Origin: Macrostomum lignano
Lineage: Eukaryota
Direction of reading: 5' to 3'
DNA length: 64,000 bases
Assembly: GCA_002269645.1 (NCBI GenBank)
Contig: NIVC01000365.1
Span: 434,001-498,000, forward strand
The notes below the pieces were generated by a model. It made no database searches. It was not told the DNA's origin and saw nothing but the letters and a program-made list of their open reading frames with translations. Each line of letters starts with the position of its first letter. Position 1 is the first letter of the stretch. Below are positions 22,565 to 62,371 of this stretch, piece by piece. Position numbers and translations under genes: made by a program.

Positions 22565-22771
22565 TCAGGCCCCAATATTTTGGTCGCAGGTGCAGCCGGC
22601 CACCTGCTTGACGTTGACTACGAAGCTCCTGCCAGGCAGGTTCGAGCAGCTGACCGTCACTGGCGCCTCAGTGGACTCGCGGGTCGGGTGGCAGCAGCTG
22701 CAGAGTGACGCCACCGGCTGGCCAGACAGGGCCGCGTGCTGCTCAAGGACGTAGTTCACCTGCGCCTCGGT
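22565..22771 (-). CDS. Giant gene last exon: second half of C-terminal cystine knot
   Basis: CGCAG|ACC; TEAQVNY...[10 protein letters not shown]...VTVSCSN...[15 protein letters not shown]; completes the CTCK begun by CEGTCPS in the previous exon. Confidence 0.88.
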   Translation of the reverse strand, partial: TEAQVNYVLEQHAALSGQPVASLCSCCHPTRESTEAPVTVSCSNLPGRSFVVNVKQVAGCTCDQNIGA

Positions 22772-61700: not shown

Positions 61701-62371
61701 CATCTCCCGAGAGCGATCCCATCTCCCGAGAGTGATCCCAACTCCCGAGAGTGATCCCAACTCCGAGAGTGATCCCAACTCCCGAGAGTGATCCCAACTC
61801 CTAAGAGTGATCCCATCTCCCAAGAGTGACCCCATCTCCCAAGAGTGATCCCAACTCCCGAGAGTGATCCCAACTCCTAAGAGTGATCCCATCTCCCAAG
61901 AGTGACCCCATCTCCCAAGAGTGATCCCAACTCCCGAGAGTGATCCCAACTCCCGAGAGTGATCCCATCTCCCGAGAGTGATCCCAACTCCCGAGAGTGA
62001 TCCCAACTCCCAAGAGTGATCCCAACTCCCGAGAGTGATCTCATCTCCCGAGAGTGATCCCAACTCCCAAGAGTGATCCCAACTCCCGAGAGTGATCCCA
62101 ACTCCCAAGAGTGATCCCATCTCCCAAGAGTGACCCCATCTCCCAAGAGTGATCCCAACTCTGGAGGGCGATCCCCCTACTCACGCCTGCCGGATGCTGA
62201 TAGGTTCGGTGTCGCCGCCACTCTGCAGGCGGTCCACCAGCACGGAGTTCCGGTTGACCCGGTTGACCGCATTTTCCAGCCCCGGGCTGAGCGCCGCCGA
62301 GGCCGCCGCGCGGCGGACACCAGCAGCAGCGACAGCAGACACCGCTGTTGAACAGAAAAGCTGCCAGCCAT
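22565..62371 (-). CDS. Giant secreted SCO-spondin/hemolectin-like gel-forming mucin-type glycoprotein (24 exons, ~31.4 kb CDS, ~10,400 aa after correcting indels)
   Basis: Phase-consistent GT/AG exon chain: 62185-62371, 61339-61520, 60648-60822, 59659-59826, 58103-58309, 57539-57823, 56622-56988, 56089-56332, 55130-55634, 54385-54790, 52954-53399, 52544-52687, 51863-52428, 51415-51664, 50873-51298, 50662-50787, 50330-50455, 50131-50256, 49911-50002, 42769-49835, 26336-42703, 24897-26165, 23133-24589, 22565-22771. Domain order: SP, EMI, EGF, TB-like, 3x(VWD-C8-TIL), VWC, LDLa x5, F5/8C-like array, PTS arrays, TSP1/TIL/VWC, CTCK. Confidence 0.85.
22835..23045 (-). mobile_element. tRNA-derived SINE (intronic)
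   Basis: Minus-strand head with a B-box GGTTCGATTCC; homologous segments occur at 24775-24875 and 12432-12780. Confidence 0.65.
23133..24589 (-). CDS. Giant gene exon: TSP1, TIL, VWC-like modules and first half of CTCK
   Basis: [36 protein letters not shown]...[26 protein letters not shown]. Confidence 0.92.
24775..24875 (-). mobile_element. SINE head fragment (intronic)
   Basis: CAAGCCCCAAA...AATGCGG...CACGGAATCGAACC is shared with the 22.9-23.0-kb copy. Confidence 0.55.
24897..26165 (-). CDS. Giant gene exon: four TSP1 repeats, TIL and VWC-like modules
   Basis: [66 protein letters not shown]. Confidence 0.92.
26336..42703 (-). CDS. Giant gene 16.4-kb exon: three F5/8C-like domains, 38-aa repeat array and TT(P/T)AG array
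   Basis: TGTAG acceptor at 42704-6 and G|GTACG donor at 26335. It contains the 3320-aa ORF and further ORFs joined across 1-bp deletions, with no intron-like sequence between them. Confidence 0.8.
26400..35075 (-). repeat. Coding 15-bp tandem repeat ([10 protein letters not shown] pentapeptide, ~580 copies; mucin PTS domain)
   Basis: ACCACACCAGCCGGA and variants, in an open frame flanked by unique coding sequence. Confidence 0.97.
35600..41680 (-). repeat. Coding 114-bp tandem repeat (38 aa, ~53 near-identical copies)
   Basis: [38 protein letters not shown]; copies differ mainly at one synonymous Pro codon (CCC/CCT). Confidence 0.97.
42769..49835 (-). CDS. Giant gene 7.1-kb exon: F5/8C-like domains including the 219-aa repeat array, plus one LDLa-like module
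   Basis: CGCAG|GAC acceptor completes an LDLa (DCE|DGTDELC); donor A|GTAAGT at 42768; frames joined across 1-2-bp deletions. Confidence 0.8.
43440..49205 (-). repeat. Coding 657-bp tandem repeat (219 aa, nine copies)
   Basis: The [10 protein letters not shown]...[12 protein letters not shown] plus Pro/Thr linker unit recurs every 657 bp (for example ORFs at 48093 and 48750). Confidence 0.95.
49911..51298 (-). CDS. Giant gene exons encoding TIL, VWC and five LDL-receptor class A modules
   Basis: Exons 50873-51298, 50662-50787, 50330-50455, 50131-50256 and 49911-50002 carry FxC...CI....CDG..DC...SDE..C motifs. Confidence 0.9.
51415..52687 (-). CDS. Giant gene exons encoding third VWD and C8
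   Basis: [27 protein letters not shown]...[14 protein letters not shown]; [31 protein letters not shown] (exons 52544-52687, 51863-52428, 51415-51664). Confidence 0.92.
52954..55634 (-). CDS. Giant gene exons encoding second VWD, C8 and TIL modules
   Basis: [13 protein letters not shown]...CEYVL (55130-55634); [11 protein letters not shown]...C8 (54385-54790); TIL/VWC (52954-53399). Confidence 0.9.
53433..54322. repeat. 29-bp intronic minisatellite (~30 copies)
   Basis: CAGGGCTGCTCAGGACATCGCTAACCTCA and CATGG/AAT variants. Confidence 0.95.
54838..55118. repeat. 21-22-bp intronic minisatellite
   Basis: GTGACAGGCAGGTGATGGAGG(G), about 13 copies. Confidence 0.92.
55669..56068. repeat. (GACA)n microsatellite, ~100 units
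   Basis: Near-perfect tetranucleotide run inside an intron. Confidence 0.97.
56089..58309 (-). CDS. Giant gene exons encoding first VWD, C8 and TIL
   Basis: [17 protein letters not shown] (58103-58309), [13 protein letters not shown] (57539-57823), GLCGNYDGD...C8 (56622-56988), CASECPTTC...[15 protein letters not shown] (56089-56332). Confidence 0.9.
57005..57440. repeat. 12-bp intronic minisatellite (GAGAATTCGGGT)n
   Basis: About 35 copies, most containing GAATTC. Confidence 0.93.
57850..58091. repeat. 21-bp intronic minisatellite
   Basis: GCAAGCGGAACTCAGAGGTG(A/G), about 11 copies. Confidence 0.93.
58403..59657. repeat. Composite 15/24-bp intronic minisatellite with higher-order block duplication
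   Basis: CACTGTCCCGGACA(C) and CACTGTCCCGGACACCCACAGACA units; the block near 58730-58990 recurs near 59140-59410. Confidence 0.93.
59659..62371 (-). CDS. Giant gene 5' exons: signal peptide, EMI-like, EGF-like and TB/8-Cys-like modules
   Basis: ATG at 62371 gives [29 protein letters not shown] (after a 1-bp indel); QCDYDY...[13 protein letters not shown]; [24 protein letters not shown]; YCFSDASC...[19 protein letters not shown]. Confidence 0.75.
59941..60458. repeat. ~520-bp pure purine (GAGAG/GGAGA)n tract
   Basis: Essentially only G and A on the plus strand, intronic. Confidence 0.95.
60906..61255. repeat. 22-bp intronic minisatellite
   Basis: CTGTCACCCTCTGTCAGCCTGT, about 15 copies. 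Confidence 0.92.
61682..62161. repeat. 19-bp intronic minisatellite
   Basis: GAGAGTGATCCCAACTCCC, about 25 copies. Confidence 0.92.

What the first reader, a model, noticed from the sequence alone, without database searches (positions are those of the whole stretch)
22565..62371. ~10,400-aa SCO-spondin/hemolectin-like protein expanded into a modular mucin by three different coding arrays
Seen: a phase-consistent 24-exon chain from a signal peptide to a cystine knot, with the order EMI, EGF, TB-like, 3x(VWD-C8-TIL), LDLa x5, F5/8C-like domains, about 7 TSP1 with TIL/VWC, then CTCK. Established: EMI + 3 VWD + LDLa + F5/8C + TSP1 + CTCK is the SCO-spondin layout, and VWD/CTCK modules polymerise VWF and gel-forming mucins. 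Unusual: about 7,500 residues in the middle are three separate arrays, made of folded lectin-like beads, a charge-patterned 38-mer and a glycosylatable pentapeptide. Inference: this is a polymerising secreted gel, fibre or adhesive component (mucus, glue, egg coat or Reissner-fibre-like). Flatworm adhesive proteins also combine VWD/C8/TIL/TSP1 with long ~220-aa tandem repeats, so it may belong to that functional class.
Basis: partly seen in the sequence, partly recalled or inferred. Interest (0 to 1): 0.85.

Follow-up and report, generated by a model that had tools for sequence, protein, structure and literature searches.

The report
Giant flatworm SCO-spondin-like mucus protein gene
This is a real, expressed gene of about 10,500 codons from the flatworm Macrostomum lignano. 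It encodes a secreted, mucin-like, probably polymer-forming glycoprotein of a kind already known in molluscs, ribbon worms and flatworms, and this window shows it at full length for the first time.

Summary
On the minus strand, 62371 to 22565, 24 GT-AG exons chain in phase from a signal peptide to a cystine-knot-like tail, giving about 10,490 aa. Pfam confirms EGF, 3x VWD-C8-TIL, 5 LDLa, 7 TSP1 and 3 tail TIL. It does not confirm EMI, TB, F5/8C or CTCK.

The three arrays are real:
- 9 x 219 aa (a folded bead plus a Pro/Thr linker)
- 53 x 38 aa
- about 578 x (A/V)GTT(P/T)

An AlphaFold model of the bead (pLDDT 81) matches discoidin/F5-8C/CBM32 folds.

The organism is Macrostomum lignano. Eighteen peptides from the published footprint proteome (Wunderer 2019, Dataset S2) match the window exactly. 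About 22 frameshifts are one-base assembly deletions, and other assemblies carry the missing bases.

The gene is not Mlig-ap1 or Mlig-ap2. Fragmentary "hypothetical" or "VWFD domain-containing" models of it already exist (A0A1I8IQU4, BOX15_Mlig009912g1, PAA71036.1). Homologues with the same head and bead arrays are the "mucin-2-like" proteins of Patella, Lineus and Liolophura. Limpet pedal-mucus protein P-vulgata_3 has the same VWD x3 plus LDLa x5 head.

Verdict: a new, full-length member of the known lophotrochozoan class of SCO-spondin-like gel-forming mucins. Moderate interest.

The parts
62185..62371 (-). Exon 1: start ATG at 62371 and signal peptide [21 protein letters not shown]. One 1-nt assembly deletion lies in a GC-rich run near 62300 (the frame-aware script placed it at 62245).
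   Evidence: The frame is confirmed by NCBI model BOX15_Mlig009912g1 (P0154). Donor is GTGAGT.
61285..61520 (-). Exon 2: first part of the EMI-like module. One 1-nt deletion near 61381.
   Evidence: MS peptide [15 protein letters not shown] maps to 61337-61293.
60647..60822 (-). Exon 3: end of the EMI-like module ([13 protein letters not shown]) plus an EGF domain.
   Evidence: Pfam EGF_2 at 23.9 bits. Splice sites.
59659..59826 (-). Exon 4: TB/hybrid-like cysteine module (RYCFSDASC...CCSAGG...GVCTAC).
   Evidence: Fibrillin-1 EGF-hybrid chain 5ms9_A matches at E=8e-6. No Pfam TB hit.
58103..58316 (-). Exon 5: start of VWD1 ([21 protein letters not shown]). One 1-nt deletion near 58237.
   Evidence: The acceptor at 58316 follows P0154.
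57539..57823 (-). Exon 6: VWD1, continued.
56622..56988 (-). Exon 7: end of VWD1 (GLCGNYDG) plus C8-1.
   Evidence: Pfam C8 at 2.7e-16. Peptides [18 protein letters not shown] and [11 protein letters not shown] map here.
56089..56332 (-). Exon 8: TIL-1.
   Evidence: Pfam TIL. Peptides [17 protein letters not shown] and [11 protein letters not shown] map here.
55130..55634 (-). Exon 9: VWD2.
   Evidence: Pfam VWD. Peptide [10 protein letters not shown] maps here.
54385..54790 (-). Exon 10: end of VWD2 plus C8-2.
   Evidence: Pfam C8. Peptide [25 protein letters not shown] maps here.
52954..53399 (-). Exon 11: TIL-2 and further cysteine-rich modules.
   Evidence: Pfam TIL. Peptide [11 protein letters not shown] supports this acceptor, which the UniProt model missed.
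52544..52687 (-). Exon 12: end of a TIL/E module. The C5 run at 52618 should be C6.
   Evidence: A0A1I8IQU4 and P0154 read [14 protein letters not shown].
51863..52428 (-). Exon 13: VWD3, which opens with a GDPH motif.
   Evidence: Pfam VWD at 1.2e-29. Peptides [13 protein letters not shown] and [13 protein letters not shown] map here. GDPH found.
51415..51664 (-). Exon 14: C8-3.
   Evidence: Pfam C8 at 1.1e-16.
50873..51298 (-). Exon 15: TIL-3 plus LDLa-1.
   Evidence: Pfam TIL and Ldl_recept_a.
50662..50787 (-). Exon 16: LDLa-2.
   Evidence: Pfam at 4.2e-10.
50330..50455 (-). Exon 17: LDLa-3.
   Evidence: Pfam at 2.4e-5. Splice sites.
50131..50256 (-). Exon 18: LDLa-4.
   Evidence: Pfam at 1.4e-9. 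Peptide [15 protein letters not shown] maps here.
49911..50002 (-). Exon 19: first part of LDLa-5.
   Evidence: The LDLa cysteine and acidic pattern is completed in exon 20 (...RDCE|DGTDELC).
42769..49835 (-). Exon 20 (7.07 kb). It holds the end of LDLa-5, unique bead D0 (49763-49302), the 9 x 219-aa bead array, unique bead P1 (43369-42944) and an LDLa-like module (42898-42773).
   Evidence: About 12 one-base deletions here are filled in the Mlig_3_7 copy. Peptides [22 protein letters not shown] and [10 protein letters not shown], plus repeat peptides, map here.
43300..49202 (-). Array 1: 9 tandem 657-bp units. Each is a bead of about 155 aa bounded by Cys...GC, followed by a Pro/Thr-rich linker of about 64 aa.
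   Evidence: Unit spacing is 657, 657, 649, 654, 657, 653, 656, 656 bp. Units differ by 0-1 substitutions plus 1-nt deletions. The AF2 model has pLDDT 80.8, and Foldseek returns discoidin/CBM32/DOC folds.
26336..42703 (-). Exon 21 (16.4 kb). It holds beads P2 (42638-42199) and P3 (42165-41720), the 38-mer array, bead P4 (35555-35112) and the pentapeptide array.
   Evidence: Six 1-nt deletions all shift the frame in the same direction. Four of them remove one base from a CCC or GG run inside otherwise identical 114-bp units.
35605..41677 (-). Array 2: 53 x 114 bp, encoding [38 protein letters not shown]. Each unit has 11 Thr, 7 Pro, 7 Glu and 3 Lys.
   Evidence: TRF reports 99% matches. Unit-by-unit census.
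26399..35076 (-). Array 3: about 578 x 15 bp, encoding (A/V)GTT(P/T), 47% Thr. It contains a perfect 2,565-bp internal duplication.
   Evidence: A single 3,383-codon open frame runs through it.
24897..26165 (-). Exon 22: TSP1 repeats interleaved with TIL/VWC-like modules.
   Evidence: Pfam TSP_1 at 4.2e-26 and TSP1_spondin at 1.9e-24. Splice sites.
23133..24589 (-). Exon 23: TSP1 and TIL modules, then the first half of the cystine-knot-like module (from 23306).
   Evidence: Pfam TSP1_spondin and TIL. Splice sites.
22565..22771 (-). Exon 24: second half of the cystine-knot-like module (...CSCCHPT...VSCSN...AGCTCD) and the stop codon.
   Evidence: Weak match to inhibin cystine knots, E=0.007. 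No Pfam hit. The AF2 single-sequence model failed.

Best explanation
WHAT IT IS. The window holds one intact, expressed gene of Macrostomum lignano for a secreted glycoprotein of about 10,500 aa. It belongs to the SCO-spondin-like, gel-forming-mucin class of Lophotrochozoa.

HOW IT MOST LIKELY WORKS. All steps below are inferred from what these domains do in VWF and MUC2, except where marked as shown.
1. The signal peptide sends the protein into the secretory pathway.
2. The cystine-knot-like C-terminus pairs two chains tail to tail.
3. The three N-terminal VWD-C8-TIL assemblies join dimers head to head, or pack them for storage in granules. This gives long disulfide-linked polymers.
4. The middle holds about 4,900 aa of Thr/Pro-rich repeats, made of the 38-mer and the pentapeptide. 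These carry dense O-glycans that stiffen and hydrate the chain.
5. Fourteen discoidin-fold beads act as folded knots between the glycosylated stretches: nine near-identical copies plus five divergent ones. Like CysD domains in mammalian mucins, they offer reversible protein or glycan contacts.
6. The LDLa and TSP1/TIL modules add calcium-dependent and matrix or surface contacts.

Shown: the product is deposited outside the animal, because it is found in material that worms leave on glass. It is therefore a mucus or footprint matrix component.

THE FRAMESHIFTS. The frameshifts in the window are long-read assembly errors, not decay of the gene.
For: SHOWN BY TOOLS OR PAPERS.
- Twenty-four GT-AG exons are in phase.
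- Pfam finds VWD x3, C8, TIL, LDLa, TSP1 x7 and EGF.
- All 18 peptides of a 2,969-aa 'MUC5B / mucin-17-like / Hml' entry match the window exactly. The entry is in the footprint proteome of Wunderer et al. 2019 (PMC6410801, Dataset S2). The matches fall in 10 exons, including the bead array and a post-array bead.
- Independent models of the same gene have clean frames where the window is shifted: P0154 at 97% identity and A0A1I8IQU4.
- In the bead array the window's missing bases are present in the Mlig_3_7 copy, whose array reads as 1,408-aa and 657-aa ORFs.
- The four short units of the 38-mer array each lack one base from a CCC or GG run.
- The bead model has pLDDT 80.8 and pTM 0.79. Its best PDB matches are factor V C domains, the DDR2 discoidin domain, neuropilin b1, CBM32 and APC10, all at probability 1.0. 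A bead profile finds CBM32 and F5/8C chains at E=0.03-0.08.
- Only 28 of 1.84 billion representative proteins match the bead profile. The named ones are M. lignano paralogues and proteins of Lineus, Liolophura, Patella, Seison and Mytilus; the Lineus, Liolophura and Patella ones are called 'mucin-2-like'.
- Patella XP_055959230.1 and Lineus XP_064639835.1 have the same head followed by bead/PTS arrays: EMI-like, EGF, TB-like and 3 VWD, plus 5 LDLa in Patella and 7 interspersed LDLa in Lineus.
- Limpet pedal-mucus protein P-vulgata_3 (VWD x3, LDLa x5, SCO-spondin-like) is expressed in the pedal sole (PMC7333891).
- Lang et al. 2016 place invertebrate gel-forming mucins next to SCO-spondin and call F5/8C domains characteristic of Lophotrochozoa (PMC4948705).

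INFERRED. Polymerisation, O-glycosylation and the role of the beads.
Against: - No transcript or peptide links the TSP1/cystine-knot tail to the mucin body. Six C-terminal tryptic peptides were absent from the stored, truncated part of the supplements.
- If intron 21 were retained, a stop would follow after three codons, which would give a tail-less isoform.
- Pfam does not recognise CTCK or EMI, and the CTCK model failed at pLDDT 35. C-terminal dimerisation is therefore pattern-based.
- All three VWD domains carry GLCG rather than the CGLC motif linked to VWF multimerisation.
- The footprint samples also contain tubulin and spectrin, so presence there does not prove a role in adhesion.
- The tissue of expression is unknown.
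- Array copy numbers come from one assembly, except the 9 beads, which Mlig_3_7 also shows.
Confidence: 0.8

Rival explanations
1. It is a working part of the duo-gland adhesive itself: a third glue protein beside Mlig-ap1 and Mlig-ap2, made in the adhesive gland cells of the tail.
For: - Its peptides are in the footprint proteome.
- Its overall layout mirrors Mlig-ap2: VWD/TIL/C8/LDLa head, long repeats of about 220 aa, TSP1/TIL tail (PMC6410801, PMC8621496).
- The limpet homologue is part of an adhesive pedal mucus (PMC7333891).
Against: - Double knock-down of ap1 and ap2 removes the adhesive vesicles altogether, and the authors treat those two as the major glue components (PMC6410801, PMC8621496).
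- The footprint samples carry obvious cellular and mucus carry-over.
- A second paralogous mucin-like protein, A0A1I8GJ02, is found there too, which fits general body mucus better.
- No peptide was found in the stored part of the PNA pull-down or tail datasets. Those files are truncated, so this is weak.
Confidence: 0.12
2. It is two genes or two transcripts: a mucin that ends just after the pentapeptide array, and a separate TSP1/TIL/cystine-knot protein encoded by exons 22-24.
For: - No peptide or database model spans intron 21.
- Reading through the donor at 26336 gives a stop three codons later.
- RefSeq models of the Patella and Lineus homologues end without a TSP1/CTCK tail.
- The limpet head (P-vulgata_3) and a TSP1+CTCK protein (P-vulgata_6) were recovered as separate transcripts (PMC7333891).
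Against: - Intron 21 is a short (170 nt) GT..AG intron with matching phase 1.
- Exon 22 has no upstream ATG or signal peptide of its own in frame.
- No AATAAA lies in the intron (read from the sequence).
- Mlig-ap2, curated from genome, transcripts and Sanger clones, joins the same kinds of head, repeats and TSP1 tail in one protein (PMC6410801).
- Short-read transcript assemblies always break in such repeats (PMC8621496).
Confidence: 0.1
3. It is a decaying duplicate (pseudogene) or an assembly artefact, given about 22 frameshifts and near-identical arrays.
For: - Many frame breaks exist.
- M. lignano carries at least two copies. Copy A in Mlig_3_7 is 91-98% identical.
- The Mlig_3_7 contig is palindromically mis-joined inside the array.
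- A perfect 2,565-bp duplication sits in array 3.
Against: - Almost all breaks are single-base deletions in the same direction, often in short homopolymers.
- The same sites are intact in other assemblies and models.
- There are no in-frame stops apart from those caused by the shifts.
- All 18 peptides match exactly.
- Across about 1,500 head residues only 3 real substitutions separate the window from A0A1I8IQU4.
Confidence: 0.04
4. It is the true flatworm orthologue of vertebrate SCO-spondin and acts inside the nervous system, as a Reissner-fibre-like thread.
For: - It shares the domain order EMI-like, 3 VWD, LDLa cluster, discoidin-fold domain, TSP1/TIL, cystine knot.
- Invertebrate mucins group with SCO-spondins in Lang et al. 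2016 (PMC4948705).
- TSP1+TIL hits include proteins named SCO-spondin-like.
Against: - The protein is found in material shed outside the body.
- It has only 7 TSP1 repeats, and about 4,900 aa of PTS repeats that vertebrate SCO-spondin lacks.
- The closest architectural homologues are mucus proteins (PMC7333891).
- Flatworms have no central canal (general knowledge).
- Orthology was not tested by a tree.
Confidence: 0.04

Closest known systems
Lophotrochozoan gel-forming mucin-like proteins: 'mucin-2-like' XP_055959230.1 of Patella vulgata (probably the full form of pedal-mucus protein P-vulgata_3), XP_064639835.1 of Lineus longissimus and XP_064614628.1 of Liolophura sinensis
   Same: - Patella has a signal peptide, an EMI-like module ending CC(A/P)GYxGxxC, EGF, a TB-like module, 3x VWD with C8/TIL (VWD3 opening with GDPH) and five LDLa, followed by tandem discoidin-fold beads (C..EGM...LRP...ACFE) separated by Pro/Thr linkers.
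- Lineus has the same head (its model starts inside the EMI-like ending) and bead arrays, with 7 LDLa modules interspersed among the beads.
- The Liolophura model holds only bead and Pro/Thr-linker repeats and shows no head.
- The limpet protein is a pedal-mucus component expressed in the sole (PMC7333891).
   Different: - The flatworm gene adds two huge simple PTS arrays, 53 x 38 aa and about 578 x 5 aa.
- Its nine array beads are near-identical.
- It carries a TSP1/TIL/cystine-knot tail that the mollusc and nemertean RefSeq models lack or have not assembled.
- Bead sequences are only 12-25% identical between species.
Mlig-ap2, the surface-binding adhesive protein of Macrostomum lignano (GenBank MH586845; Wunderer et al. 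2019)
   Same: - Same species and same general plan: VWD/TIL/C8/LDLa head, a long central run of tandem repeats of about 220-255 aa, and a TSP1 plus TIL tail.
- Both are giant proteins: 14,794 aa for ap2 and about 10,500 aa here.
- Both are found in footprint mass spectrometry (PMC6410801).
   Different: - It is a different gene. None of 12 ap2 primers (3 Mlig-ap1 primers were also tried) or 10 ap2 peptides match the window, even allowing mismatches.
- ap2 has 2 VWD domains and repeat sets of 21 x 255 aa and 25 x 221 aa. This gene has 3 VWD domains and arrays of 9 x 219 aa, 53 x 38 aa and about 578 x 5 aa.
- No protein of ap2's length is among the 28 matches to the bead profile.
- ap2's tail-specific expression, PNA-reactive glycan and RNAi phenotype are unknown for this gene.
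Vertebrate SCO-spondin (SSPO)
   Same: - N-terminal EMI-type module, three VWD-C8-TIL units and a cluster of LDLa repeats directly after them.
- Discoidin-type domain(s), TSP1 repeats interleaved with TIL/VWC, and a C-terminal cystine knot. The SSPO layout is from established knowledge and PMC4948705 and PMC7333891; the features of this gene are.
   Different: - It has 7 TSP1 repeats, against about 25 in SSPO.
- It has fourteen discoidin-fold beads, far more than SSPO.
- It has about 4,900 aa of mucin-type PTS repeats.
- It has extra EGF and TB-like modules.
- It is shed outside the body rather than into cerebrospinal fluid.
Mammalian gel-forming mucins (MUC2, MUC5AC, MUC5B) and VWF
   Same: - An N-terminal trio of VWD-C8-TIL assemblies, a central PTS region and a C-terminal cystine-knot-type end.
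- Folded domains interrupt the PTS region, as CysD domains do in MUC2 and MUC5.
- The head is 23-28% identical to FCGBP, VWF and mucin-2. The transcriptome annotators' best human hit was MUC5B.
   Different: - No fourth VWD domain.
- No CysD (Mucin2_WxxW) hit in any Pfam scan.
- It has LDLa, discoidin-fold beads, TSP1, EMI-like and TB-like modules that these proteins lack.
- It has GLCG rather than CGLC in all VWD domains.
Insect hemolectin / hemocytin
   Same: [quoted passage not shown] Hml was the transcriptome annotators' best Drosophila hit.
   Different: - Hemolectin has the '3+2' VWD plan, with two more VWD units after the discoidin domains. No VWD follows the beads here.
- Hemolectin lacks large PTS arrays, the LDLa cluster and the TSP1 tail.

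Membership tests
Gel-forming mucin-like proteins (sensu Lang et al. 2007/2016) | Three N-terminal VWD-C8-TIL units | tested here: met
   Pfam finds VWD x3 (up to 1.2e-29), C8 x3 and TIL x3 in the head.
Gel-forming mucin-like proteins (sensu Lang et al. 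2007/2016) | Long central Pro/Thr/Ser-rich (PTS) region | tested here: met
   The 38-mer array has 11 Thr and 7 Pro per unit. The pentapeptide array is 47% Thr. The whole protein is 23.8% Thr and 10.4% Pro. Actual glycosylation was not tested.
Gel-forming mucin-like proteins (sensu Lang et al. 2007/2016) | C-terminal cystine knot (CTCK) | tested here: inconclusive
   The motifs CEGTC...CSCCHP...VSC...GCTC are present. Inhibin cystine knots match at E=0.007. There is no Pfam hit at E<=10. The AF2 single-sequence model failed at pLDDT 35.
Gel-forming mucin-like proteins (sensu Lang et al. 2007/2016) | CysD domains within the PTS region (present in many members, not all) | tested here: not met
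   No Mucin2_WxxW hit in any Pfam scan of the unique regions. Discoidin-fold beads occupy that position instead.
SCO-spondin | N-terminal EMI domain | tested here: inconclusive
   No Pfam EMI hit at E<=10, for this protein or for the Patella and M. lignano homologues. The cysteine spacing and the terminal CCPGYxGxxC are present and are shared with the Patella and Lineus heads.
SCO-spondin | LDLa cluster directly after the third VWD unit | tested here: met
   Five LDLa modules lie in exons 15-20. Four are scored by Pfam and the fifth was read across the splice.
SCO-spondin | Many TSP1 repeats interleaved with TIL/VWC (about 25 in vertebrates) | tested here: inconclusive
   Seven TSP1 and three TIL stretches lie in the tail. 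The kind matches, but the number is far lower.
SCO-spondin | Orthology in a VWD or whole-head phylogeny | not tested
   No SSPO sequences were at hand. The word-indexed search returned FCGBP, VWF and zonadhesin because of their many VWD copies.
F5/8 type C (discoidin) domain | Match to the Pfam family model PF00754 | tested here: not met
   None of the six bead types hits it at E<=1.
F5/8 type C (discoidin) domain | Galactose-binding-domain-like beta-sandwich fold | tested here: met
   The AF2 model has pLDDT 80.8 and pTM 0.79. Foldseek top hits are factor V, the DDR2 discoidin domain, neuropilin b1, the CASPR2 discoidin domain, CBM32 and APC10, with E about 1e-5 and TM 0.5-0.6.
F5/8 type C (discoidin) domain | Cysteines at the two ends of the domain (the N-to-C disulfide typical of animal discoidin domains) | tested here: met
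   C3 and C154 are invariant in alignments of 6 and of 18 beads. The bond itself is inferred.
F5/8 type C (discoidin) domain | Sequence-profile similarity to solved members | tested here: inconclusive
   The bead profile against the PDB gives CBM32 of GH89 at E=0.03 and an 'F5/8 type C domain-containing protein' at E=0.076.
Hemolectin / hemocytin | [quoted passage not shown] | tested here: not met
   No VWD or C8 lies downstream of exon 14.
Mlig-ap2 | Sequence identity with the published gene (probe primers, MS peptides) | tested here: not met
   No hits for 12 ap2 primers (4 mismatches allowed) or 10 peptides (3 mismatches allowed).
Mlig-ap2 | Repeat sets of 21 x 255 aa followed by 25 x 221 aa | tested here: not met
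   The arrays here are 9 x 219 aa, 53 x 38 aa and about 578 x 5 aa.
Mlig-ap2 | Expression in adhesive gland cells and a non-adhesive RNAi phenotype | not testable with these tools
   Needs in situ hybridisation and RNAi.

The most novel reading that the evidence does not exclude
This gene and its paralogue A0A1I8GJ02 may be overlooked working components of the flatworm footprint or mucus. They would represent the older, Spiralia-wide 'SCO-spondin-like mucin with discoidin beads' from which the specialised glue protein Mlig-ap2 arose by duplication and repeat replacement. The bead would then be a distinct, so far unmodelled branch of the discoidin/CBM32 superfamily that binds glycans or surfaces.
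Probability: 0.25. Interest if true: 0.6.

Novelty: new member of a known kind. Interest (0 to 1): 0.4.

Why it matters
- It gives the first full-length view of a third giant secreted protein in the flatworm bioadhesion model. Public assemblies and annotations break this gene into fragments, and in Mlig_3_7 the contig is mis-joined inside the repeat array.
- It ties a flatworm footprint protein to limpet pedal-mucus proteins and to nemertean and chiton 'mucin-2-like' genes. The link is a shared head and a shared bead domain that Pfam does not model.
- This supports the idea that SCO-spondin-like mucins are an old mucus or adhesive scaffold in Spiralia.
- It supplies a corrected protein against which the deposited mass-spectrometry data (PRIDE PXD012626) can be searched again.
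- The general class was already described (Lang et al. 2016; Kang et al. 2020), so this is an extension rather than a surprise.

Tried and rejected
- Generic splice-site scoring discriminated poorly. I fixed the junctions by reading the sequence with domain logic, peptides and public models.
- I first placed the exon 5 acceptor at 58360 and guessed the reading 'NSHLTFDG'. P0154 showed that the acceptor is at 58316 and the reading is 'NSISTFDG'.
- The first homology search gave only 41% identity to a M. lignano entry. That entry proved to be a frame-garbled model of the same gene.
- I tested whether the gene is Mlig-ap1 or Mlig-ap2. It is not.
- Pfam at E<=10 found nothing for EMI, TB or CTCK.
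- The AF2 single-sequence model of the cystine-knot region was unusable at pLDDT 35, so I ran no fold search on it.
- The search with the 977-aa tail was swamped by TSP1-repeat proteins of dinoflagellates and others, and says little about orthology.
- The search with the head was dominated by FCGBP, VWF and zonadhesin.
- C-terminal peptides were not found in the stored supplements, which are truncated.
- A literature search for the locus tags and accessions found nothing.
- ARAGORN and Rfam found nothing in the B-box-containing intron element.

Full report
WHAT IS IN THE SEQUENCE

The region is G+C-rich with strong strand asymmetry. Tandem Repeats Finder reports two very large arrays. One has 15-bp units (26399-35076, about 578 copies). 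The other has 114-bp units (35605-41677, 53 copies, 99% matches).

Stop-to-stop translation shows that the coding strand is the minus strand. Cysteine-rich pieces lie between 62.4 kb and 49.9 kb. A repeat of about 657 bp runs from 49.2 kb to 43.3 kb. The two arrays follow. More cysteine-rich pieces lie between 26.2 kb and 22.6 kb.

Pfam on the raw pieces gives EGF, VWD-C8-TIL three times, LDLa repeats, and TSP1 plus TIL in the last pieces.

GENE MODEL

I fixed the junctions by reading the sequence around each open stretch. I then checked all sites together.
- There are 24 exons.
- All 23 introns are GT..AG and their phases agree.
- The ATG at 62371 opens a typical signal peptide.
- The stop is at 22567-22565.

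Exon 20 is 7.07 kb and exon 21 is 16.4 kb. Together they hold all three arrays. The coding sequence is 31.5 kb, or about 10,490 codons.

The NCBI model BOX15_Mlig009912g1 (P0154) later confirmed the first 14 exons residue by residue. It also moved my exon 5 acceptor to 58316.

THE FRAMESHIFTS ARE ASSEMBLY ERRORS

The chain needs about 22 one-base corrections. Four lines of evidence show that these are errors in the assembly.
- Nearly all shift the frame the same way, as a base missing from the assembly.
- In the 114-bp array, the four units that are 113 bp long each lack one base of a CCC or GG run in otherwise identical units.
- In the 657-bp array the unit lengths are 657, 657, 649, 654, 657, 653, 656 and 656 bp. 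The units are otherwise 99.8-100% identical.
- The missing bases are present in an independent assembly of the same locus, Mlig_3_7 contig NIVC01001187.1. There the array reads as ORFs of 1,408 and 657 codons.

UniProt A0A1I8IQU4 and P0154 read [14 protein letters not shown] where the window has C5 instead of C6. They also give clean frames in exons 1, 2 and 5.

ORGANISM AND EXPRESSION

The first homology search hit a Macrostomum lignano entry. It proved to be a frame-garbled model of the same gene.

The supplementary proteomics of Wunderer et al. 2019 (PMC6410801, Dataset S2, adhesive footprints) contain a transcript-derived protein of 2,969 aa. It is of type '5UTR_CDS' and is annotated MUC5B / mucin-17-like / Hml. 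All 18 peptides I collected from it match the window's minus-strand translation exactly. They fall in exons 2, 7, 8, 9, 10, 11, 13, 18 and 20. They include repeat-unit peptides and one peptide from a bead beyond the array.

The gene is therefore transcribed and translated, and its product is left on the substrate. The same samples also contain tubulin and spectrin, so presence there is not proof of a role in adhesion.

IT IS NOT A KNOWN ADHESIVE GENE

Mlig-ap2 is described as follows: two VWD domains, TIL, C8 and LDL at one end; TSP1 and TIL at the other; 21 x 255 aa plus 25 x 221 aa repeats between; 14,794 aa in all.

None of its 12 probe primers (nor 3 Mlig-ap1 primers) or 10 MS peptides matches the window, even allowing mismatches. 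The plan is alike but the gene is different, most simply a paralogue.

THE THREE ARRAYS

Array 1 has nine 219-aa units. Each is a module of about 155 aa bounded by Cys...Gly-Cys, followed by a Pro/Thr-rich linker of about 64 aa.

Array 2 has 53 copies of [38 protein letters not shown]. Each unit has 11 Thr, 7 Pro, 7 Glu and 3 Lys. Thirty units are identical in DNA. Most of the others differ by one synonymous change.

Array 3 has about 578 pentapeptides, mostly AGTTP (279) and AGTTT (147), and is 47% Thr. Its units are about 86% alike. A 2,565-bp block is repeated perfectly.

The arrays sum to about 6,900 aa.

Five further, divergent copies of the bead module lie before, between and after the arrays. 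An extra LDLa-like module lies there too.

THE BEAD IS A DISCOIDIN-FOLD DOMAIN THAT PFAM DOES NOT SEE
- The six bead types are 12-25% identical. They share only the first Cys, a Gly-Met and the last Cys.
- Pfam finds nothing.
- AlphaFold2 on this small alignment gives a confident beta-sandwich, with pLDDT 80.8 and pTM 0.79.
- Foldseek against the PDB returns factor V C domains, the DDR2 and CASPR2 discoidin domains, neuropilin b1, CBM32 modules and APC10/DOC. All have probability 1.0 and TM 0.5-0.6.
- A profile of 18 beads finds CBM32 and 'F5/8 type C' chains at E=0.03-0.08.

RELATIVES

An exhaustive HMM search of 1.84 billion representative proteins finds only 28 matches to the bead. The named ones are:
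- M. lignano paralogues
- 'mucin-2-like' proteins of Lineus longissimus, Liolophura sinensis and Patella vulgata
- proteins of Seison (a hypothetical protein) and Mytilus (labelled TTN)

The Patella protein (4,007 aa) has a signal peptide, an EMI-like module, EGF, a TB-like module, three VWD units and five LDLa. Bead and Pro/Thr-linker arrays follow. The Lineus protein has the same head and arrays, with 7 LDLa modules interspersed among the beads.

Kang et al. 2020 (PMC7333891) found a limpet pedal-mucus protein, P-vulgata_3, with VWD x3, C8, TIL and LDLa x5. It is 'highly homologous' to the first third of SCO-spondin and is expressed in the pedal sole. They also found a separate TSP1+CTCK protein that resembles the Mlig-ap2 tail.

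Lang et al. 2016 (PMC4948705) had already noted two things. Invertebrate gel-forming mucins group with SCO-spondins, and F5/8C domains are characteristic of Lophotrochozoa.

WHAT REMAINS WEAK
- EMI, TB and CTCK are not recognised by Pfam.
- TB has a fibrillin EGF-hybrid match, E=8e-6.
- The tail has only a weak inhibin cystine-knot match, E=0.007, and its AlphaFold model failed.
- The link of exons 22-24 to the mucin body rests on a short in-phase intron alone. No peptide from the tail was found in the stored supplements.
- All three VWD domains have GLCG, not CGLC. VWD3 opens with GDPH, a motif that is self-cleaving in some mucins (the meaning is from general knowledge).
- The tissue of expression is unknown.

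MECHANISM (INFERRED)

By analogy with VWF and MUC2, the expected behaviour is as follows.
1. Tail-to-tail dimers form through the cystine knot.
2. Head-to-head assembly occurs through the VWD units.
3. A bottle-brush middle forms from dense O-glycosylation of about 4,900 aa of PTS repeats.
4. The discoidin-fold beads provide folded, possibly glycan-binding cross-link points.

The result would be a hydrated gel or thread laid down on the substrate.

PUBLIC STATE OF THE GENE

In Mlig_3_7 the locus is split into three 'hypothetical protein' models. The contig flips orientation inside the bead array, which joins two copies. UniProt A0A1I8IQU4 (5,222 aa) holds the head from VWD1, the bead array, the 38-mer array and a garbled pentapeptide array. 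No paper in the searchable library names these accessions.

VERDICT

The finding is a full-length new member of a known class. It is useful to the bioadhesion and mucin fields but not surprising.

Noticed in passing
window 53429-62161 (introns 1-6 and 8-10): Nine of the first ten introns consist almost wholly of minisatellites with 4- to 29-bp units. In several the array begins at or within a few dozen bases of the donor. In intron 10 each of the 31 units of 29 bp carries its own GTGAG donor-like motif.
   Followed up: partly
window 24770-24890 (intron 22) and 22930-23060 (intron 23): Both introns carry a shared element of about 110 bp, 81% identical, with a tRNA B-box-like GGTTCGATTCC. It looks like a tRNA-derived SINE. 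ARAGORN and Rfam find nothing.
   Followed up: partly
window 29500-34700: The otherwise diverged pentapeptide array (about 86% identity between units) contains a block of about 2.6 kb that is 100% identical to the block 2,565 bp further on. It is either a very recent internal duplication or an assembly artefact.
   Followed up: partly
L001 (GenBank NIVC01001187.1, 38608-60180) against window 43349-61859: The public Mlig_3_7 contig carries a second copy of the gene, 91-98% identical and more diverged in its introns. That copy runs into the bead array, and the contig then flips to an inverted copy that is 99.4% identical to the window. This is a palindromic join inside the array. The gene is annotated there as three fragments.
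   Followed up: yes
P0009 (UniProt A0A1I8GJ02), not in the window: A paralogous M. lignano mucin-like protein with the same head plan and its own beads also has peptides in the footprint proteome (a 2,625-aa entry).
   Followed up: partly
window 56988, 54784 and 52030 (GLCG motifs); 52423-52397 (GDPH): All three VWD domains have GLCGNYDG without the preceding Cys of the CGLC motif. VWD3 opens with GDPH, a possible self-cleavage site. GDPH is also present in the Patella and Lineus homologues.
   Followed up: partly
window 19053-21595 (+), 14787-15293 (+), 4166-4969 (-): Neighbouring ORFs include leucine-rich repeats followed by a guanylate-kinase domain (LRGUK-like). This gene converges on the mucin gene's 3' end, with about 970 bp between the stop codons. 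There is also a V-ATPase proteolipid-like piece and an Rdx-family hit.
   Followed up: partly
window 26326-26336: If intron 21 is not spliced, the frame reads ...IVSGTF and then a stop. This could give a tail-less mucin isoform.
   Followed up: no
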